Of a stretch of DNA of 64,000 bases, positions 56,619-64,000 are shown piece by piece. The notes under the pieces were generated by a model. The model was given only the letters and a program-made list of their open reading frames with translations. It had not been told where the DNA came from and did no database searches. The first letter of the stretch is position 1, and every line of letters begins with the position of its first letter. The translations under genes and the position numbers were made by a program. The DNA is taken from IMG/VR virus record IMGVR_UViG_3300032236_000747, positions 186,001 to 250,000 of that record. The stretch is one strand, 5' to 3'.

Positions 56619-57611
56619 ATGAGTTTCATGCTGAACGCTTTGCTAGCGGTCTTACCTCCAAATAGAAAACAAACACCCAGTGGATGGATGAGTTTTGATG
56701 CACCTTGTTGTCATCACAGGGGAGAAACTCGTGATGACCGCAAACGTGGCGGAGTAATGATATCCGGTGACGCTTTTAGCTATCATTGCTTTAACTGTAA
56801 CTTCAAAGCAGGATGGAGTCCGGGTAAAACTCTAAGCACCAACACACGCAAGTTGTTCAGTTGGTTGGGTGTATCAGACACAGAAATAGCCAGACTGGCC
56901 ATGGATGCACTGCGTGCGCATGAGTCGTTGCCTGTTAAGAAAAGAGAATACAGTTTTGAACTCAAAGAAGTTGAGCTTCCAGAAAACTGTCTACCCATAT
57001 TAGATCCTAGTCTAGTTGACAGGGCCGATACTAGATGGTTAGATGCTGTTATGTATCTAGCTGATCGCAAAATAGATCTTGATTGGTATCCATTTATGTG
57101 GGCAGATGCCGATGGTTATAGAGATCGTGTTATCATACCCTTTTACCAAGATAACAAGATAGTCGGTTATACAGCACGTAAAATCAAAGAAGGCAAGCCC
57201 AAATACCTAGCACACAATCAGCCTGGGTATGTGTTTAACCTAACTGGTCAACCTCGTGAAAGAAAGTATGTTATAGTAGTTGAAGGACAGTTTGATGCCA
57301 TATCTATAGACGGTGTGTGCGTAGGTCACAATGATCCCAACGAAACGCAAACATCGAGAATAAACGCACTGGCCCGTGAAGTTATAGTTGTACCAGATAG
57401 AGACAAAGCAGGCGCACAACTTCTTAACTCTGCGCTTGCCAATGGCTGGAGTGTGAGCTTACCACCCTGGGGCGATGACATAAAAGATGTAGCAGACGCA
57501 GTTAAGAGATATGGTAGATTATACACGCTAGCCGCGATATTAGAATACAGAACCGCTAATCAGCTAAAAATACAAGTAATGCAAAAGAAACTACAAGGAC
57601 TACATAAATGA
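56619..57611 (+). CDS. DNA primase (Zn-binding + TOPRIM; T4 gp61-like)
   Basis: APCCHH...YHCFNC, RVIIPF, GYTAR, PKY, VVEGQFDA and PDRDKAG. Confidence 0.9.
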   Translation: MSFMLNALLAVLPPNRKQTPSGWMSFDAPCCHHRGETRDDRKRGGVMISGDAFSYHCFNCNFKAGWSPGKTLSTNTRKLFSWLGVSDTEIARLAMDALRAHESLPVKKREYSFELKEVELPENCLPILDPSLVDRADTRWLDAVMYLADRKIDLDWYPFMWADADGYRDRVIIPFYQDNKIVGYTARKIKEGKPKYLAHNQPGYVFNLTGQPRERKYVIVVEGQFDAISIDGVCVGHNDPNETQTSRINALAREVIVVPDRDKAGAQLLNSALANGWSVSLPPWGDDIKDVADAVKRYGRLYTLAAILEYRTANQLKIQVMQKKLQGLHK

Positions 57612-59071
57612 TCAAACAAGACAAAGACAAACCTAACTACGATATTGAAATACAAAAACTCTACTTGGAAATGTTTCTCAGCGATGCTGAAACGTTTAGT
57701 CGTTGCCAAAGCATATTTGACCCTGATAATTTTGACCAAAAGTTACAGGAGACAGCAAGGTTTATTACCACATATGTAGACGAGTATAAACTTATTCCGG
57801 ACGTTAGTATTGTCAATGCTACTTGTAAAAAGGACCTACAGATAGTATCTTTGCCCGCTCAAAACTATGAATGGCTCAAGGATGAATTTGAGCAATTTTC
57901 CAGGCACAAGGCCTTGGAACGTGCGATCATGAAGAGCTTTGATTTGCTGGAAGAAGGCGAGTATGGGCCAGTTGAAAAGCTGGTCAAGGACGCTATTCAA
58001 ATCAGTTTAACCAAGGACATGGGCACTGATTACTTCGAAGATCCCAAAGCACGTCTAACTGCGCTCAAGGACGGAAATGGTCAAATTTCCACTGGTTGGC
58101 CCAGCATTGACAAAAAATTGTATGGGGGCTTTAATCGAGGTGAACTCAATATTTTCTGTGCTGGATCAGGCGGTGGTAAGAGTTTGTTTCTTGCTAACAT
58201 GGGCGTAAACTGGGCCATGCAGGGTCTAAACGTGCTTTACTTGACCTTTGAATTAAGTGAAAAATTAGTGGCCATGCGCCTGGATTCTATGGTCACAGGT
58301 ATCACAACCAGAGACATCTTTAAGAGCATTGATGATGTTGAATTAAAGGTTAAAATGATCGGAAAAGCTTCGGGAAGCATACAAATCAAGTATATGCCCA
58401 GCGGAAAAAATTGTAACGATATTCGGTCATATTTGAAGGAATATCAGGTCAAAAAAGGCCTAAAACCTGACGTAATTTTAATAGATTACCTGGATTTAAT
58501 GATGCCACTAAATGTGAAGGTATCGCCCAGCGATCTCTTTGTTAAAGACAAATATGTGTCAGAAGAGATACGTAACTTGGCCATGGAAACACAGTGTATC
58601 ACTGTAACAGCTAGTCAGCTAAACCGCGCTGCCGTTGAAGAAATTGAGTTCGATCACAGCCATATCAGCGGTGGCTTGTCAAAGATCATGACAGCGGATA
58701 ACGTTATTGGTATCTTTACCAGTCGTGCTATGCGTGAGCGTGGACGCTATCAAATCCAGTTTATGAAGACACGTTCCAGCTCAGGCGTGGGTCAAAAGGT
58801 AGACTTGGAATTTAACGTGGAAACCCTGCGTATCAGTGATCTAGGTGATGAAGGCGATGTGGGTGCAGGCAGCAACAATAGGCCTGGATCAAACACTACT
58901 CAGGGCAGTGTATATGCTGGACTCAAGCGTACCAGCACAGTCACAGCAGATCCAGAAACAGGTGAAATCGCAGATCCCACAGTGGGCATAAATGCTCCAA
59001 AAATACGTGCTGAAGTAGGTGGTTCGCAACTGCGCAGTATGTTGGCTAAACTTAACTCAGAACGAGATTAA
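57608..59071 (+). CDS. Replicative DnaB-family helicase (T4 gp41-like)
   Basis: STGW, GSGGGKS, TFELSE, IDYLDLM, TASQLNR and KTRSS. Confidence 0.95.
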   Translation: MIKQDKDKPNYDIEIQKLYLEMFLSDAETFSRCQSIFDPDNFDQKLQETARFITTYVDEYKLIPDVSIVNATCKKDLQIVSLPAQNYEWLKDEFEQFSRHKALERAIMKSFDLLEEGEYGPVEKLVKDAIQISLTKDMGTDYFEDPKARLTALKDGNGQISTGWPSIDKKLYGGFNRGELNIFCAGSGGGKSLFLANMGVNWAMQGLNVLYLTFELSEKLVAMRLDSMVTGITTRDIFKSIDDVELKVKMIGKASGSIQIKYMPSGKNCNDIRSYLKEYQVKKGLKPDVILIDYLDLMMPLNVKVSPSDLFVKDKYVSEEIRNLAMETQCITVTASQLNRAAVEEIEFDHSHISGGLSKIMTADNVIGIFTSRAMRERGRYQIQFMKTRSSSGVGQKVDLEFNVETLRISDLGDEGDVGAGSNNRPGSNTTQGSVYAGLKRTSTVTADPETGEIADPTVGINAPKIRAEVGGSQLRSMLAKLNSERD

Positions 59072-59631
59072 AACCAGTTAGCAACTTCTTGCTTGCCCGC
59101 AACGTCAATGGCGTGCAGCCACTGTTCGTCTAGCGTACCCTTGAATATGAGATCAGCAGTGGCGGGCACAGTTAACCAACGATGACCGGGTTTCCAAGGA
59201 TGTGCGCCCGACATTTCCCCTTCTAGGCCTCCGCTGCTTACCACACGTTGTCCCATGACGCAGCGCCACTTTTCCGGCCCTTCGTCAGTGGCTATGGCAG
59301 CAAGTATGCTGGTTTCGCTGGTTATGCCAAGCTCGTCATTGATTTGTCGAGTATTGGGCACAGCCCAGTCTAGGGTGTGTATAAACTGTACACGATGCGG
59401 CTCGTCTGGACCACCGTAGAATACAGGATCATTGTTATAGGCAGCAATACCTGCGTTGCGCAGCACAGCAGTAACAGGTATGTTGTTGACCGCGGGCTTG
59501 TTGATCATGATCATGCTGGAACCTGCACTCCAGTGGCTGGTCACCAACATAATACCACGATTGTATTCCGTGTGATCAGTGTTGGGTATGGCCACCAGTA
59601 CTTGTCCCATATAGTTGTCTCTTTGTCGCAT
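59068..59631 (-). CDS. YqgE/AlgH (DUF179) family protein
   Basis: GQVLVAIP, MINKP, PVFYGGP...FIH, LEGEM and WLTVPATADLIF. The start could be 59631 or 59610. Confidence 0.8.
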   Translation of the reverse strand: MRQRDNYMGQVLVAIPNTDHTEYNRGIMLVTSHWSAGSSMIMINKPAVNNIPVTAVLRNAGIAAYNNDPVFYGGPDEPHRVQFIHTLDWAVPNTRQINDELGITSETSILAAIATDEGPEKWRCVMGQRVVSSGGLEGEMSGAHPWKPGHRWLTVPATADLIFKGTLDEQWLHAIDVAGKQEVANWF

Positions 59632-59659
59632 CAAGTATTTATTGGTTAAATACTAGACC

Positions 59660-60352
59660 ATGAACATCCGTGAGTTTACCCCCGGTGTAGAAATACACCA
59701 AGAACTAAATCCCCTACTTTGGCAAGGCGATCAACTGAAACCAGAAGTACGCCTAGCCCTGCTGCACATAGCCCACAAGTTTGAAATCTTCCTGGGCATT
59801 GATATAGTGGTCAGGGACCGTATTATCACGGGCAGTCAAACCAGTTTTACCTATACAGAAGCCAGCGACATTGACCTGCACATTATTGTTGATTACTCTG
59901 CTATCACTGACTGCGCAGTGCCCGTGCACGAGCTTTTTGACACCAAACGCAAGCTGTGGAAAGAGCAGCACAGCATAGATATCCACGGTATACAAGTAGA
60001 GTGCTATGTAGAAGACACTGCTCAACCTGTGCGGGGACATGTCTACAGCTTGGATGAAGACGCTTGGGTATCACATCAGCCCACACAGGCTTCGGTGCAG
60101 AGCCTACCTCCAGATGTGGTCAAACAAGCAGCATGGTGGACTGATCGCATCAAAACAGCCATAGCCAGTCGCAATCTAGCTGTGATGATTTCCACGGCAC
60201 GTCTACTGCGTGATTATAGGGGCCGCGGCTTGGGCAAGGAAGGCGAAATGGGCACTGCCAATATAACCTATAAAACCCTGCGCAACAATGGTGTTATACA
60301 TGATCTAATCAAGGCTGTGCGCCGCCTAGAAGACAGGGCAATGAGCCTATAA
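59660..60352 (+). CDS. Pol-beta-superfamily nucleotidyltransferase
   Basis: ITGS...YTEASDIDLH (GS plus DxD), with a third acidic residue in VECYVE. Confidence 0.75.
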   Translation: MNIREFTPGVEIHQELNPLLWQGDQLKPEVRLALLHIAHKFEIFLGIDIVVRDRIITGSQTSFTYTEASDIDLHIIVDYSAITDCAVPVHELFDTKRKLWKEQHSIDIHGIQVECYVEDTAQPVRGHVYSLDEDAWVSHQPTQASVQSLPPDVVKQAAWWTDRIKTAIASRNLAVMISTARLLRDYRGRGLGKEGEMGTANITYKTLRNNGVIHDLIKAVRRLEDRAMSL

Positions 60353-60356
60353 ACTC

Positions 60357-60385
60357 TTGACCTGCACACTCCGGGGCTGTATAAT
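60357..60385 (+). promoter_or_regulatory. sigma70-type promoter
   Basis: TTGACC-17-TATAAT; the ATG at 60392 begins 7 nt downstream. Confidence 0.8.
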
Positions 60386-60391
60386 ACTAGT

Positions 60392-60892
60392 ATGCATACA
60401 CTATACTTAGACATGGACGGCGTAGTAGCCGATTGGGACCGAGCAGCCACTGAACTAGTGGGTAAACTGCGTAAAAGCATTGACGGACGTTGGAGTCACG
60501 AAGACTGGCAGACCATACGTCAAGATCAGCGATTCTACCGCAATCTCCCCCTCATGGATGGAGCTCATACACTAGTCAGCGTGTCCCGTGAGTTTAGATC
60601 CCGCGGTTGGCAACTCTTGTTTCTCACAGCCATACCACATGACAACGATCACCCTTGGGCATTTCATGACAAGATGTCCTGGGCACGTGAACACTTTCCA
60701 GATATTCCTGTGCACTTTGGACCCTACTCAGAAGACAAACAAGACCATACCCTACCCGGTGATATACTAGTAGATGACCGTGGCAGTAACTGTGTAGAGT
60801 GGGAATCCCGGGGTGGAATAGCTGTACATGTTACCAACAATGACTTGAAACCCACCATTGAGAAACTCCGGGAGCTGCTCGCCGAAGCCTAA
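60392..60892 (+). CDS. HAD-family 5'(3')-deoxyribonucleotidase-like protein
   Basis: LYLDMDGVVADW, FLTA, DKMSW and ILVDDR. Confidence 0.85.
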   Translation: MHTLYLDMDGVVADWDRAATELVGKLRKSIDGRWSHEDWQTIRQDQRFYRNLPLMDGAHTLVSVSREFRSRGWQLLFLTAIPHDNDHPWAFHDKMSWAREHFPDIPVHFGPYSEDKQDHTLPGDILVDDRGSNCVEWESRGGIAVHVTNNDLKPTIEKLRELLAEA

Positions 60893-60952
60893 CCCAGGCG
60901 CGAAGCGCCAGCGGTGCAAAAAGATTTTCCGGGTATATTAAATACGTATATT

Positions 60953-61129
60953 ATGCTCCTACCCCTGCTAGTAGACCTTAAAATACATCCAGAGTGGAGA
61001 GTACTTAAACGATTCAAAGATTCACGCCTGGCACGCATCTACTACTTGAGTCTTGATGATCGTAGACAGGTTAACATCGTGTTTAAACCCAAACATCCAC
61101 TACAATGGTGGGTAATAGAAAAGAAGTAA
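60953..61129 (+). CDS. Small hypothetical protein
   Basis: TAAATA at 60939 and ATG at 60953; 58 aa. Confidence 0.5.
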   Translation: MLLPLLVDLKIHPEWRVLKRFKDSRLARIYYLSLDDRRQVNIVFKPKHPLQWWVIEKK

Positions 61130-61133
61130 TAAC

Positions 61134-61400
61134 ATGGCACAAATCAAAATAATATGGCGCATGGGCCTACACAGTGAAATCAAAGAGGGCAACAAGCGTC
61201 TAAGCAAGCTGCACAGTGAGCTAGATCGTTGGTGTCAAGCTAATAAGGTAAGTAGAGACTACTTTAAACTGCGTATGACTGCTCCATATGTCTATGAGTG
61301 TGAACTAGATGAAGACAATGATACCACGCTGATATTCATGACAACATGGTATGGAACACCCTATAAAACGGCTTCAACTCTAACAAACTCTTCCTTGTAG
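61134..61400 (+). CDS. Hypothetical protein
   Basis: 88 aa, directly after the previous ORF. Confidence 0.6.
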   Translation: MAQIKIIWRMGLHSEIKEGNKRLSKLHSELDRWCQANKVSRDYFKLRMTAPYVYECELDEDNDTTLIFMTTWYGTPYKTASTLTNSSL

Positions 61401-61519
61401 AGACTGCGAGCGTGCTCCGCTGCGAGTGATTCTGTGTGAGCTAGCACAATACCAGTACTTGTAGTACCAGTGCGCACATGCTCCTGTGTGATGATTCTAA
61501 ATTGTAGATATTCTTGCAT
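61361..61519 (-). CDS. Small hypothetical protein
   Basis: ATG at 61519, 4 nt after the 61524 stop; 52 aa. Confidence 0.5.
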   Translation of the reverse strand: MQEYLQFRIITQEHVRTGTTSTGIVLAHTESLAAEHARSLYKEEFVRVEAVL

Positions 61520-61523
61520 GCAG

Positions 61524-61793
61524 TTATTTACTGAGCTGATCACTGTAGCGCAGTAAAAACAGAGTAGAGTACTTTTCCAGCTTGAAGCTAACAGCACATA
61601 TACTGGAGTTGTGTAGGGCCCAAGTATCCCAACACCATTCTCTGTAGTGTGGACCTATAGTGGATTCTAACCATGATTCCACTGTGTAGACACTTTCTAT
61701 CCAATCTATTTGCCCATGGTGTTCTACGAGGGGCCAAGGTGCGGCAGCACGATAGGGCAAGCGTAGACTGGGATGATCGTAGAGTGCTAGCAT
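61524..61793 (-). CDS. Hypothetical protein
   Basis: Minus-strand TAAATA at 61803-08. Trp-rich, ending F..EK..TLFLLRYS. Confidence 0.65.
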   Translation of the reverse strand: MLALYDHPSLRLPYRAAAPWPLVEHHGQIDWIESVYTVESWLESTIGPHYREWCWDTWALHNSSICAVSFKLEKYSTLFLLRYSDQLSK

Positions 61794-62603
61794 ACTAGTA
61801 CATATTTACACAGGATACTAAGGAGTCAGCGGACTCCTGCCCGGGGGGCGTTTTTTAAGACTGGGCGCCGAGGGTTAGGGGTTATGTAAAAAATTGCTGT
61901 GCAAAAATTCGTGGCCTTGGAGATCTCGGCCTATGGTGGATCTAATCTAAGTCACTTTTTATTTTGGGGGATTTTGCACGCCAAAGTTGCTTTTTAGCAA
62001 CAAGTTTTCAAATGCACTCCCGGGTACCCCCTCGGGGTCTCGGCCACCACTGTGTTCACTGCACGCTGCGTGCGACGCACGTGAGTAGCCCCGGGGTCTA
62101 GCCATATATCGGCCTTGACCCCAGCCTCTGCGAAGATAAGAATTATTATCTCCTTGGGCGGCTTCCCCGGGGTCTGCCCCAAGAGTATGTGCACGCTGCG
62201 TGTGTAGTATAGCGTGGCTACAGCTAGCAGCAGTGTAACAGCCCGCTCCCGCAGCAGTTCTTTCACGAGTGCAGAGTGAATGCTGCGTGGGGAGGGCCCG
62301 TGAGTGTGTACTATATACGTAGCCTAGCACACTAGTGTAGTACACATGTACTAGTGCTAGCAGCTTACCATACAGCGATATATCTAGGAGTGCAATCAAC
62401 TCTGCGTGGGGTTGTAAGGGAGCTATCCGTGTGTAGACCGCTGTGCTGCTGCTCGCTGCGGGGAAGATCATGCTAGGATCCCGGGGCAGCTCCTTGACAT
62501 TTGTGGCCGGGGTCTCTGTGTTACCCCAGGAGCTACCGCGAAGGTAGTGCATGGTGGTTAGCAGCAAAAGTATTAGCAAAAGCACAGTGAGCTCCTTGTT
62601 GTG

Positions 62604-62664
62604 TACTGACAGAGTCAGTATAGCATAACTTTAGCTCTTGTCAACCATTATTTTGATTTATTTT
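62604..62664 (-). promoter_or_regulatory. Early sigma70 promoter, copy 1 of a 61-bp direct repeat
   Basis: A-rich UP element, TTGACA, 16-nt spacer ending TGC (extended -10), TATACT, and the palindrome TACTGAC-aga-GTCAGTA. Confidence 0.8.
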
Positions 62665-62805
62665 GGTAGACCCCGGCCAGGTCCTTAACTGCGTAGCACT
62701 GTGGTCTTGTAAAACCCCGGTCAGGTCAACGATTGATCATCTGCGTGGTCTGCTGTTTAATTTAAAACCCCGGCCGCAAATTGTGCAGTAGTGCAGGGTG
62801 ATCTC

Positions 62806-62943
62806 TCAGGGATATATCTCGTGATATAACCGTTGTAGCTCAAACTGGTCTACCTCGTAGGCCGCCACGGTATCCTTGACCGCTTGTATATAATCGCAGC
62901 CAAGGTCTAGGAGCTGTTTAAAGTGGATCACAGCCTCTGTCAT
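62806..62943 (-). CDS. Small early protein (45 aa, MTEAVIHFKQLLDLG...)
   Basis: ATGA-coupled to the upstream 29-aa ORF, with a GAGG RBS; absent from the supplied ORF track. Confidence 0.6.
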   Translation of the reverse strand: MTEAVIHFKQLLDLGCDYIQAVKDTVAAYEVDQFELQRLYHEIYP

Positions 62944-63029
62944 TTGATGTACCTCTCTATATACCACACCTTAGCAGCAAAGATCACCACCACGGCTAGG
63001 GAGATCAAGATCACTTGTAGATCGCTCAT
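62940..63029 (-). CDS. Small membrane peptide (29 aa, MSDLQVILISLAVVVIFAAKVWYIERYIK)
   Basis: ATGA-coupled on both sides; a single hydrophobic segment. Confidence 0.6.
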   Translation of the reverse strand: MSDLQVILISLAVVVIFAAKVWYIERYIK

Positions 63030-63178
63030 CGTGCTAGCCTCACGGTGATGTCTGCGGAATAACCATCGTGTTTGATCAGTGCGCTGCGCACATCGTGTAA
63101 GGTCATGTCGCGGTCAAAGAACACGGTATCCACGATCTGACCGTTGCGGATAATGTCCCAGGCTTGCTGCTTGCTCAT
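63026..63178 (-). CDS. Small early protein (50 aa, MSKQQAWDIIRNG...)
   Basis: AAGGAG RBS before the ATG at 63178. The longer called ORF starts upstream of the promoter. Confidence 0.7.
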   Translation of the reverse strand: MSKQQAWDIIRNGQIVDTVFFDRDMTLHDVRSALIKHDGYSADITVRLAR

Positions 63179-63280
63179 CGTTGCTCCTTGAGGTGAAAAA
63201 GACCGCTGAGGGGAAGAACCACGGTTGCGGTACTGTGTACAGCACGGGCGGTGTGGCCCTAGGCCCCCAGCAGCAGAGTT

Positions 63281-63309
63281 ATTATAACACGGTTTTACCA
63301 AGTTGTCAA
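63281..63309 (-). promoter_or_regulatory. Perfect-consensus sigma70 promoter
   Basis: TTGACA-17-TATAAT on the minus strand. Confidence 0.9.
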
Positions 63310-63367
63310 CTGTGTTATTAAAATACTTGCTGACCTTGTCAAGGCCAGCGAGCACGTTAAGCGGGGT

Positions 63368-63619
63368 CTAGCAATCTGCGTCAAAATCTGCCCACTCCTG
63401 CGCTTCGTCGGGCTGACCGTCCCAGGCGCAATCTCGCTCGCGATCGCAGACCAATTCCCAGTAATCCTTGAGGGCGGCCATGGCGGCGGACAAGTTGCCG
63501 TTTGCCTCTGTGAGATACTGATCGTAGTCCTCAGCGCCAAAACACTCGTAGACCCAGTGCCCGCCGGCCTCGTAGTTGTCCAGTGCGTATTGCTCTAACA
63601 GTTTGATAGCTTGTGACAT
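63368..63619 (-). CDS. Small acidic early protein
   Basis: 83 aa, AAGGA RBS, directly downstream of promoter copy 2. Confidence 0.75.
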   Translation of the reverse strand: MSQAIKLLEQYALDNYEAGGHWVYECFGAEDYDQYLTEANGNLSAAMAALKDYWELVCDRERDCAWDGQPDEAQEWADFDADC

Positions 63620-63639
63620 AGCGTTGTTCCTTGTTTGTT

Positions 63640-63700
63640 TACTGACAGAGTCAGTATAGCATAACTTTAACGTTTGTCAACCATTATTTTAATTTATTTT
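63640..63700 (-). promoter_or_regulatory. Early sigma70 promoter, copy 2 of the 61-bp direct repeat
   Basis: Matches 62604-62664 with 4 mismatches. Confidence 0.8.
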
Positions 63701-63768
63701 TAGCCTAGCAAAAACCATGCTTTTAGACCCCGAGACGATTTCTCTGGATTTGCTCCGGGGTCTTTGAA

Positions 63769-63999
63769 TTAGATCTCTTCAGCCTCTAATTCGTCTGCAG
63801 CAGCGATGAAATCGTCGATGAGATCAGCAATGCTGTTCTTACGTCGTTCGCTGCGCTTGCGTGGTTTGACCGAGGTGCCCTCTTGGTAGACCTTCCATAC
63901 ATGGTCTTTACAGTAGCTCTTACCTTCGATGCTAGCTTGGCAGCAGGTGGGATGATGACTCTCTGTGTTGTCCCCGATGAACTGGCAGAGTGGTTCGTG
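63769..63999 (-). CDS. GcrA C-terminal-domain-like protein, start outside the window
   Basis: The translation ...LCQFIGDNTESHHPTCCQASIEGKSYCKDHVWKVYQ...EEI* resembles the GcrA pattern C.WP.GD......FCG.....G..YC..H...aYQ. Confidence 0.5.
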   Translation of the reverse strand, partial: HEPLCQFIGDNTESHHPTCCQASIEGKSYCKDHVWKVYQEGTSVKPRKRSERRKNSIADLIDDFIAAADELEAEEI

Positions 64000-64000
64000 A

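What the first reader, a model, noticed from the sequence alone, without database searches (positions are those of the whole stretch)
61810..62800. Motif-dense, probably non-coding kilobase: candidate origin/packaging site or long structured RNA
Seen: in a genome that is otherwise wall-to-wall coding, this ~1 kb has no convincing protein. CGGGGTCT occurs four times in one orientation (62033, 62092, 62168, 62508), then flips (62668, with AAACCCCGG variants at 62712 and 62765) across the promoter at 62604-64. A second motif, CTGCGTG, recurs at about 62066, 62196, 62283, 62402 and 62741, with TGCACGCTGCGTG exact twice. Palindromes include AGGAGTC-agcg-GACTCCT (61821-38) and CTAGCAC...GTGCTAG (62324-60). 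A strong promoter fires leftwards into the region. Inference: iteron-like protein-binding sites around a transcription-primed (R-loop) origin, as T4 origins are promoter-driven; alternatively a terminase recognition region or a ~700-nt ncRNA.
Basis: partly seen in the sequence, partly recalled or inferred. Interest (0 to 1): 0.65.

Follow-up and report, generated by a model that had tools for sequence, protein, structure and literature searches.

The report
Phage early-region cassettes and boundary element
This kilobase is the tail end of a jumbo phage's early-gene block: repeated promoter/stem-loop cassettes, an orphan reading frame, and a short DNA element conserved in about fifty related phages; nothing tested shows it to be a replication origin.

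Summary
The motifs are real. CGGGGTCT occurs 15 times in 16 kb (0.25 expected), and all genome copies lie in one 9.6-kb leftward early block of a 354.7-kb jumbo phage. The four copies in the region are not spaced like iterons. Each is one arm of a G-run/loop/C-run stem-loop. The block has at least 14 near-consensus sigma-70 promoters, each with a stem-loop, an AT-rich tract, an SD and a start codon. This is the layout described for T4-type PeSL cassettes. The promoter at 62617-62644 belongs to a 66-nt cassette that is 92% identical to one 1,036 nt upstream.

"No protein" is only half right. The 208-codon frame is open far beyond chance (0.03% of shuffles). It has no relatives among 1.84 billion proteins, no codon periodicity, and no counterpart in close relatives whose flanking genes are conserved.

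The firmest new result is at the left edge (61886-62040). A roughly 70-bp core plus a variable repeat, a hairpin and a C-tract is conserved at this early/late junction in about 50 related phage contigs. It also occurs in a small integrase-bearing island of a Limnohabitans genome. It matches no Rfam family, folds no better than shuffled sequence, and its function is unknown.

Origin, pac site and long ncRNA all remain untested.

The parts
61803..61810 (-). T4-type late-promoter-like GTAAATAT, 9 nt before the ATG of conserved ORF89 (61524..61793)
   Evidence: ATAAATA is the most enriched 7-mer upstream of ORFs in this genome (29 observed, 2.5 expected). ORF89 is conserved in 22 related loci.
61821..61856 (.). 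Palindrome AGGAGTC-agcg-GACTCCT followed by a short GC hairpin and a T6 run; terminator-like on the + strand
   Evidence: Sequence; terminator scan (L003 1834-1850).
61886..61955 (.). Conserved core: A-run, TTGC-N3-GCAA, A/T tract, then a roughly 33-bp block with two GATC sites ending in TCTAAG
   Evidence: blastn/nhmmer hits at 77-86% identity, while flanking genes are 66-75% identical. 64 profile hits in loci fetched through DnaB or an exact 22-mer, about 46 of them distinct, and one copy in the own genome. No consensus fold; z about 0 on both strands.
61956..62040 (.). Rest of the conserved module: T-run and G5; the place of the variable-number repeat in relatives; hairpin 61986-61991/61996-62001; C-rich tract
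   Evidence: Anchored comparison of about 50 loci. The hairpin keeps its position while its stem sequence changes.
61959..62585 (-). Orphan 208-codon ORF (GTG start)
   Evidence: Open beyond chance. No homologues. No 3-periodicity. Hexamer score -0.004 against +0.19 to +0.51 for the neighbours that are conserved or show codon periodicity; three other small ORFs also score at or below zero. AF2 pLDDT 51.5, helices at residues 2-17 and 59-95, remainder below 50.
62026..62040 (.). Stem-loop 1 (ACCCC/GGGGT arms) carrying CGGGGTCT
62090..62124 (.). Stem-loop 2 (CCGGGGTC ... GACCCCAG) carrying CGGGGTCT
62165..62184 (.). Stem-loop 3 (GGGG-tctg-CCCC) carrying CGGGGTCT
62318..62365 (.). Long palindrome (CTAGCAC ... 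GTGCTAG)
   Evidence: Sequence; paired in the predicted folds of both strands.
62509..62527 (.). Stem-loop 4 (GGGGT ... ACCCC) carrying CGGGGTCT
62592..62597 (-). Shine-Dalgarno AAGGAG, 6 nt before the GTG. This initiation region is 85% identical to the sequence at L003 7787-7806, which I read as another early gene's start.
   Evidence: Sequence; repeat family D13.
62599..62664 (-). 66-nt duplicated cassette: AT-rich tract, -35 TTGACA (62644-62639), extended -10 TATACT (62622-62617), and a 17-nt palindrome at about +1 (62604-62620). It is 92% identical to 63635-63700.
   Evidence: Repeat family D7; promoter scan; only two copies in the genome.
62665..62780 (-). Three ACCCCGG/CCGGGGT units (62667-62683, 62711-62727, about 62765-62775) downstream of ORF53. 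They form the stem-loop/terminator-like part of the cassette.
   Evidence: Repeat family D11; predicted pairing upstream of the promoter.

Best explanation
The kilobase is the distal end of the phage's leftward early block, which behaves as a hyperplastic region. The block is built from repeated composite cassettes: a stem-loop, an AT-rich tract, a near-consensus sigma-70 promoter, an SD and a start codon. Host RNA polymerase is expected to start at about 62610 and read leftwards (inferred; no RNA data).

The last cassette is a recent duplicate of the one in front of ORF83. It drives a lineage-specific 208-codon frame packed with G-run/loop/C-run and CACGC/GCGTG hairpins. These hairpins are the source of the CGGGGTCT and CTGCGTG motifs. 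Whether the frame makes a functional protein is about even odds.

By analogy with PeSL stem-loops, the hairpins most likely act as terminator or RNA-stabiliser structures and as recombination substrates (inferred). They do not look like initiator-binding iterons.

The transcript runs into a roughly 155-bp element (61886-62040) that is conserved across the clade and sits where early and late/replication transcription converge. This element is a sequence-specific cis-acting site of unknown function. Its 70-bp core is not a stable RNA fold.
For: - The window is genome 186001-250000 of a 354,680-bp virus record. Its DnaB is 48-54% identical to those of PA5oct and Atu_ph07.
- There are at least 14 minus-strand promoters matching 11-12 of 12 consensus positions in 10 kb.
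- Printed side by side, the clearest cassettes show a stem-loop, an AT-rich tract, -35, -10, AAGGAG and ATG. Repeat families D1, D2, D4, D5 and D7 correspond to these parts.
- Each of the four CGGGGTCT copies lies in a predicted stem that pairs with a nearby GGGGT(C).
- Strict G4-loop-C4 hairpins number 8 in the genome: 4 in the block and 2 in this region.
- The segment between ORF80 and the core is hypervariable. ORF53 and ORF50 have no counterpart, and ORF83 only two marginal partial hits. ORF89, ORF80, ORF105 and ORF292 are conserved in 20-40 loci.
- The closest relatives, L004 and L106, carry unalignable ORF-free hairpin arrays of about 440-510 nt at the same place.
- The PeSL description, including the G_N-loop-C_N stem-loops of RB49/phi1, comes from PMC4122927.
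- Core conservation.
Against: - No transcript data exist for this phage, so the start, end and level of any RNA are inferred.
- The open frame is very unlikely by chance. The region may therefore be an ordinary, if odd, gene.
- Six CGGGGTCT sites carry the extension AGACCCCGCTG and are predicted unpaired. The hairpin reading does not explain them.
- PeSLs were defined in T4-like phages. Recombination at these cassettes is inferred here from one duplication and from hypervariability, not observed.
- The region folds only moderately better than shuffles (z -3.0 on the minus strand, -2.5 on the plus strand).
Confidence: 0.5

Rival explanations
1. ORF208 is a genuine protein gene, for example a small two-helix membrane protein with a disordered tail. 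The kilobase would then be ordinary coding sequence, and its motifs would be incidental or secondary.
For: - The frame has zero stops, against 8-14 in the other frames.
- Only 0.03% of shuffles reach 208 open codons.
- It has a consensus promoter, an AAGGAG SD and a GTG, in an initiation region like that of another early gene.
- AF2 predicts two hydrophobic helices at pLDDT 70-86.
- The C-terminal half has a hexamer score of +0.30.
- Hyperplastic regions are rich in ORFans (PMC4122927).
Against: - There is no real relative in the 5.8-billion word search or the 1.84-billion exhaustive search. The only hit is a repeat-inflated chance match.
- tblastn finds nothing in about 110 related loci.
- There is no 3-periodicity (chi2 7.0, p 0.32), while most tested genes give chi2 29-66. 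The conserved ORF89 also shows none, so this test is not decisive on its own.
- GC by codon position is flat, 0.59/0.53/0.52.
- Residues 97-208 have pLDDT below 50.
- The last 27 or so codons run through the conserved non-coding module. In relatives the last gene stops before that module.
- The repeated 8-mer sits in all three codon phases.
Confidence: 0.3
2. The promoter makes a roughly 650-730-nt early non-coding RNA. Its multiple AGACCCCG hairpins would bind or titrate a factor that also recognises the same motif next to early genes, as a decoy or sponge.
For: - The motif recurs immediately after the stop codons of ORF83, ORF80 and ORF122, and 31 nt after the stop of ORF117.
- There are four copies in one promoter-driven unit.
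- The whole unit folds better than shuffles on the minus strand (z -6.3 with 20 shuffles; -3.0 with 60 shuffles).
- PA5oct, a distant relative, has transcribed ORF-free regions of 236-619 nt (PMC7318152).
Against: - There is no Rfam match.
- No sequence homologue is available to test covariation.
- The plus strand folds almost as well (z -3.8 and -2.5), as DNA palindromes would.
- 150-nt windows are unremarkable.
- This reading does not explain the open frame.
Confidence: 0.12
3. The region, or its conserved left edge, is a replication origin. It would be either transcription-primed or iteron-type.
For: - A strong promoter reads into it.
- The primase-like gene and DnaB lie 2.8-5 kb to the left.
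- In relatives the core is followed by G clusters and phased T-tract repeats of 11-19 nt. Their copy number varies between near-identical phages (L088 vs L089, L098 vs L104).
- The core also sits between an integrase gene and a helicase-like gene in a Limnohabitans island.
Against: - The window itself has no repeat array there and no AT-rich unwinding tract.
- The CGGGGTCT copies are irregularly spaced hairpin arms.
- GC skew shows only the orientation of transcription.
- The island shares no protein with the phage apart from a generic AAA match.
- In L087 and L098 a second copy of the core is a plain sigma-70 promoter for a + strand gene.
Confidence: 0.1
4. It is a terminase recognition (pac) region.
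For: It is a conserved non-coding sequence that is also carried by a small integrative element. Satellites are known to copy their helper's packaging site (general knowledge).
Against: No terminase gene was seen among the neighbouring genes scanned. The record has no end repeats and its ends do not lie here. No read data are available to map termini.
Confidence: 0.04

Closest known systems
PeSL cassettes (promoter-early stem-loop) of T4-type phages (Arbiol et al. 2010, PMC2839356, seen in search results only; Comeau et al. 2014, PMC4122927)
   Same: The cassette has the same parts: an AT-rich tract, a near-perfect sigma-70 promoter, an SD plus start codon at the 3' end, and a G_N-loop-C_N stem-loop just upstream. 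The cassettes are repeated many times in a block of small, variable early genes. Duplicated cassettes lie next to lineage-specific ORFans.
   Different: The host phage is a roughly 355-kb jumbo phage whose DnaB resembles those of PA5oct and Atu_ph07, not a T4-like myovirus. Here several stem-loops lie inside an open frame rather than between genes. Cassette-mediated recombination is inferred, not shown.
ncRNA001-004 of Pseudomonas phage PA5oct (PMC7318152)
   Same: They are transcribed ORF-free stretches of 236-619 nt in a related jumbo phage that depends on host RNA polymerase.
   Different: No sequence similarity was found. Neither the 3-kb window stretch nor the core gave a blastn match in the phage collection. 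Our stretch has an open frame and no expression data.
Iteron-type origins (lambda ori, P1 oriR) and the promoter-primed T4 oriF/oriG (general knowledge)
   Same: There are repeated short motifs, palindromes, GATC sites in the conserved core, and a promoter reading into the region.
   Different: There are no regularly phased direct repeats and no AT-rich unwinding element in the window. No initiator is known. The motifs are spread over the whole early block.
REP/BIME-type intergenic hairpin arrays of enterobacteria (general knowledge)
   Same: They are clusters of GC-rich imperfect palindromes in transcribed 3' regions that evolve fast and can stabilise upstream mRNA.
   Different: There is no sequence relation. 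Here the hairpins are in a phage, behind a dedicated promoter, and within an ORF.

Membership tests
PeSL-type promoter/stem-loop cassette | Near-consensus sigma-70 promoter with an AT-rich tract upstream | tested here: met
   TTGACA-16-TATACT with upstream TG at 62644-62617, and an AT-rich 62645-62664.
PeSL-type promoter/stem-loop cassette | Stem-loop (G_N-loop-C_N in RB49/phi1) just upstream of the promoter | tested here: met
   CCGGGGT units at 62667-62727 pair in the predicted fold. Clear examples lie upstream of the promoters at L003 7846 and 3680.
PeSL-type promoter/stem-loop cassette | SD and start codon of the downstream gene at the 3' end of the cassette | tested here: met
   AAGGAG at 62592-62597 and GTG at 62583-62585. 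Families D2, D5 and D13 cover these initiation regions.
PeSL-type promoter/stem-loop cassette | Many copies in a hyperplastic region, next to indels between close relatives | tested here: met
   At least 14 promoters in 10 kb. The ORF80-to-core interval differs completely among the window, L004, L106 and L008.
PeSL-type promoter/stem-loop cassette | Recombination between cassettes (mini-circle excision or integration) | not testable with these tools
   Only indirect evidence: a 66-nt duplicate at 92% identity, 1,036 nt apart.
Iteron-type replication origin | Three or more direct repeats of about 17-22 bp at regular helical phasing | tested here: not met
   The CGGGGTCT copies are spaced 59, 76 and 340 nt apart. 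The direct-repeat search reported no phased family of this kind.
Iteron-type replication origin | Adjacent AT-rich unwinding element | tested here: not met
   GC is 0.51-0.56 across 61900-62650.
Iteron-type replication origin | Strand-composition switch at the site | tested here: inconclusive
   Cumulative skew follows gene orientation only.
Known RNA families (Rfam 15) | Covariance-model match at the gathering score | tested here: not met
   No match in the window or in 10 related or host loci. Only two chance-level hits at E above 2.
Structured RNA (conserved core 61886-61955) | Conserved secondary structure with covariation | tested here: not met
   RNAalifold finds no pairs on 46 sequences. 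z is -0.2 to +1.7 on both strands. Strand inference from G-U pairs in the downstream hairpin is not significant (p 0.14).
Protein-coding gene (ORF208) | Open frame beyond chance, with an initiation region | tested here: met
Protein-coding gene (ORF208) | Homologues, codon periodicity, typical hexamer usage | tested here: not met
   homologues; chi2 7.0; score -0.004.

The most novel reading that the evidence does not exclude
The conserved core with its variable repeat, hairpin and C-tract (61886-62040) is the cis-acting site that the phage's replication or packaging machinery recognises. The small integrase-plus-helicase-like island in Limnohabitans sp. Jir72 that carries an exact 23-nt copy would then be a satellite that borrows this site from jumbo phages of this clade.
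Probability: 0.1. Interest if true: 0.75.

Novelty: new variant of a known kind. Interest (0 to 1): 0.42.

Why it matters
If the cassette reading holds, PeSL-style modular shuffling of early genes extends beyond T4-like phages to a large clade of uncultured freshwater jumbo phages. It would also give a concrete case of a promoter cassette landing in front of hairpin-rich DNA and producing an open, apparently new reading frame.

The conserved core is the more useful lead. It is a short, sharply conserved non-coding site at the early/late junction. It is shared with an integrative element in a Limnohabitans genome. That points to the likely host and gives a defined target for finding the origin, the pac site or a key regulator of these phages.

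Tried and rejected
- Rfam at gathering and at E up to 10, and a tRNA scan of the window, gave nothing.
- megablast and blastn of 61000-64000, and of a relative's core, against 50,697 phage records gave no match.
- A single-protein search of viral contigs with the 230-aa neighbour found nothing. DnaB worked.
- The word search for ORF208 found only itself. The other contig that carries it could not be fetched.
- The exhaustive protein search gave one hit, P0004 (E 1e-17). I rejected it: seven near-identical repeats each score about 31 bits, so the summed score is inflated.
- RNAalifold on the core found no structure.
- Sliding z-scores depended on window size. One run timed out without output and another ended before its coding controls.
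- I tried to assign the strand from G-U pairs and from z-scores of the module. Both strands average about -1.5, and the hairpin comparison gives p 0.14.
- I read the core by eye as a sigma-70, sigma-54, sigma-32 or sigma-E promoter. Spacing or key bases do not fit. This is my own reading, not a tool result.
- The public RNA-run search found only DNA contigs from the probable source sample.
- The core pattern was sought in 300 other genomes of the Limnohabitans family with up to 3 mismatches and was not found in those searched.
- The island's proteins were compared with the phage. Only a generic AAA match appeared.
- I first recalled ORF80 as GcrA-like. Pfam gave no hit, so I dropped that name.

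Full report
**Setting.** The window is bases 186001-250000 of a 354,680-bp virus record that is rated complete and has no end repeats. Its DnaB-like helicase (57608..59071) is 48-54% identical to those of Agrobacterium phage Atu_ph07 and Pseudomonas phage PA5oct. This is therefore a jumbo phage of that broad group. Genes run rightwards up to about 61400. From about 61500 to about 72300 (window scale) they run leftwards. That leftward block is richer in G+C than the genome as a whole (0.47-0.49 against 0.40). It holds at least 14 minus-strand promoters that match 11 or 12 of the 12 sigma-70 consensus positions. It is therefore the early block read by host polymerase. Late genes use a T4-like motif: ATAAATA is the most enriched 7-mer upstream of ORFs (29 observed, 2.5 expected).

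**The observation.**
- CGGGGTCT occurs 15 times in the 16 kb around the region, against 0.25 expected. None of 200 shuffles comes close.
- CTGCGTG occurs 11 times against 2.6 expected.
- Every genome copy of CGGGGTCT, 13 on the + strand and 2 on the - strand, lies between genome 248033 and 257602. The motif therefore marks the whole early block, not only this kilobase.
- The promoter is TTGACA-16-TATACT with an upstream TG at 62644-62617.

**What the motifs are.** When the minus-strand RNA around each copy is folded, the four copies in the region each form one arm of a short stem with a nearby GGGGT(C). The stems are at 62026-62040, 62090-62124, 62165-62184 and 62509-62527. The copy after ORF80 pairs with the inverted copy 31 nt away to make a roughly 10-bp hairpin just after that gene's stop codon. 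Six further copies upstream in the block carry the longer form AGACCCCGCTG and are predicted unpaired. I have no explanation for those. CTGCGTG belongs to CACGC/GCGTG palindromes. Strict G4-loop-C4 hairpins are rare in this genome: 8 in all, 4 of them in the block and 2 in this region.

**The cassette structure.** I printed the 14 promoters with their flanks. The clearest ones share one layout:
- a stem-loop, often with CCCCGG/CCGGGG arms and sometimes a T-run;
- an AT-rich tract;
- the -35 and -10 elements;
- AACAAGGAG;
- a start codon.

Repeat families D1, D2, D4, D5 and D7 correspond to these parts. This is the composition published for PeSL cassettes of T4-type phages, including the G_N-loop-C_N stem-loops of RB49/phi1 and their link with ORFans and indels in hyperplastic regions (PMC4122927). 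The promoter of this finding sits in a 66-nt cassette (62599-62664) that is 92% identical to the cassette in front of ORF83, 1,036 nt upstream. Only these two copies exist in the genome. The three ACCCCGG units at 62667-62775 are the stem-loop part of that cassette and lie just downstream of ORF53.

**Is there a protein?** The evidence is mixed.

For coding:
- The frame 61959..62585(-) has no stop, while the other five frames have 8-14 stops over the same span.
- Only 0.03% of 3000 dinucleotide-preserving shuffles give 208 or more open codons.
- The frame has an AAGGAG and a GTG in an initiation region that is 85% identical to the sequence at L003 7787-7806, which I read as another early gene's start (D13).

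Against coding:
- The word search found only itself.
- The exhaustive search of 1.84 billion representatives found one other protein. Its E-value comes from seven near-identical repeats that each score about 31 bits, so I discount it.
- tblastn finds nothing in about 110 related loci, although ORF89, ORF80, ORF105 and ORF292 are found in 20-40 of them.
- There is no codon periodicity (chi2 7.0, p 0.32), while most tested genes give chi2 29-66. The conserved ORF89 also lacks periodicity, so this test alone does not decide.
- The hexamer score is -0.004, against +0.19 to +0.51 for the neighbours that are conserved or periodic.
- GC by codon position is flat.
- AGACCCCG falls in all three codon phases.
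- A single-sequence AlphaFold model has mean pLDDT 51.5. It shows two hydrophobic helices (residues 2-17 and 59-95) and nothing confident after residue 96.
- The last 27 or so codons run through the conserved non-coding module.

I put the chance of a functional protein near 0.3-0.5. A frame recently put behind a translation start by the cassette duplication would fit both sets of facts.

**Close relatives.** L004 (DnaB 90% identical) and L106 have, at the same place, 513 and 438 nt rich in G5-loop-C5 hairpins and in CAGTGTG and GCGTG-GGGG motifs. Their longest open runs are only 107 and 66 codons. These arrays cannot be aligned with the window or, beyond the module, with each other. In L008 the ORF80 homologue lies about 100 nt from the module. 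The interval is therefore hypervariable, as expected of a hyperplastic region.

**The conserved module.** blastn of 59000-64000 against 80 loci fetched through DnaB found one non-coding match. It covers 61885-61976 at 75-86% identity, where flanking genes reach only 66-75%.
- A profile built from it found 64 hits in the loci fetched through DnaB or through an exact 22-mer, about 46 of them distinct, and one copy in the own genome.
- From left to right the module usually has these parts:
  - a GGTCTATA-type box;
  - an A-run, TTGC-N3-GCAA and an A/T tract;
  - a roughly 33-bp block with two GATC sites;
  - a T-run or G clusters;
  - a tandem repeat of 11-19 nt with phased T-tracts;
  - a GGCATGC box;
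  - a perfect hairpin of 6-13 bp whose stem sequence differs between lineages;
  - a C-tract, followed directly by the stop codon of the last leftward gene.
- The repeat number differs between otherwise near-identical contigs (L088 vs L089; L098 vs L104).
- The core has no consensus fold and folds no better than shuffles on either strand. The downstream part averages z about -1.5 on both strands. G-U counts do not decide the strand.
- In L087 and L098 a second copy of the core, 1.4-2.5 kb to the left, has TTGACC-17-TATAAT and sits in front of a + strand gene. The core is therefore related to a promoter context.
- In the window the module spans about 61886-62040. It has a degenerate left box and no repeat array.

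**A host link.** The exact 22-mer occurs in two prokaryote records.
- In Limnohabitans sp. Jir72 it lies between a 190-aa tyrosine integrase gene and a 494-aa DEAD-like protein (phrog_2467). These are followed by a DUF6641 protein and a second integrase.
- A weaker second copy lies next to an IS3-type end on another contig of the same genome.
- The pattern was not found, with up to 3 mismatches, in 300 other genomes of that family.
- The island shares no protein with the phage apart from a generic AAA match.
- The other record is a 3.6-kb contig binned as Methylophilaceae. It carries the whole left part of the module and may itself be phage DNA.

**Origin, pac site or RNA.** Nothing tested supports an origin within 62040-62800. 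The motif spacing is irregular, there is no AT-rich tract, and skew follows transcription only. The conserved module has some origin-like traits in relatives: phased repeats, G clusters, GATC pairs, and primase and helicase genes nearby. That reading stays open at low probability. A long leftward RNA is plausible. PA5oct has transcribed ORF-free stretches of 236-619 nt (PMC7318152). The whole unit folds better than shuffles, with z -6.3 on 20 shuffles and -3.0 on 60. The plus strand folds nearly as well, and no RNA data exist.

**Verdict.** The iteron/origin inference is not supported. The most economical reading is a PeSL-like cassette, a hairpin-rich orphan frame, and a clade-wide boundary element of unknown function.

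Noticed in passing
L003:11100-11680 (genome 257100-257680; just outside the window): This is a second ORF-poor stretch, at the far end of the early block near the divergent switch at L003 about 12300. It holds many GTATATAC-type alternating repeats and inverted repeats. It also holds two 78-nt direct repeats, 355 nt apart, that contain CACGCAG-CGGGGTCT-TATAC. It shows no codon periodicity (chi2 3.5).
   Followed up: partly
L003:10750-10826 (-): A tRNA-Met (CAT) gene lies directly behind a perfect TTGACA-17-TATAAT promoter in the early block. The 64-kb window itself has no tRNA.
   Followed up: yes
window 62604-62620 and 63640-63656: A 17-nt palindrome (TACTGAC-aga-GTCAGTA) lies at about +1 of both duplicated promoters and contains a GANTC site. 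It could be an operator, a methylation-sensitive site or a 5' RNA hairpin.
   Followed up: no
L124:3700-8800 (Limnohabitans sp. Jir72, NZ_NESC01000011.1) and L125:174-227: A small island carries two integrase genes, a 494-aa phrog_2467 DEAD-like protein and a DUF6641 protein. It holds an exact 23-nt copy of the phage core. A diverged second copy lies next to an IS3/IS407-type end. The island may be a satellite or a phage remnant, and it suggests a Limnohabitans-like host.
   Followed up: partly
L088 vs L089; L098 vs L104 (right after the core): Tandem repeats of 11-12 nt with phased T-tracts follow the core. Their copy number differs between otherwise near-identical phage contigs (about 2 vs 8, and 5 vs 3). 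L004 has four 19-nt units.
   Followed up: partly
L098:12204-12260 and L087:1910-1967: A second copy of the core, in the same orientation and 1.4-2.5 kb to the left, has a TTGACC-17-TATAAT promoter. In L098 it is followed within a few bases by the ATG of a + strand gene, so the mRNA may be leaderless. The two copies flank a small gene cassette.
   Followed up: partly
genome 245000-260000 (window about 58600 to beyond the end): This is a G+C-rich island (0.47-0.49 against 0.40 for the genome). It covers the end of the replication genes and the whole early block.
   Followed up: no
genome 250441 (L003 4441), L004:17151, L106:3715: The extended motif ACAGCGGGGTCT also lies inside the conserved 292-aa AAA-like gene, at the same position in the two closest relatives. 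That copy is therefore part of conserved coding sequence.
   Followed up: partly
window 63026-63178 (-): The 50-aa ORF matches phrog_6353 (E 1.5e-15). At least this small ORF of the variable interval belongs to a known phage family, although it has no counterpart in the fetched relatives.
   Followed up: no
window 61524-61793 (-): ORF89 is conserved in 22 related loci at 55-62% identity. Yet it shows no codon periodicity and a hexamer score near zero. These two statistics can therefore miss real small genes in this phage.
   Followed up: yes
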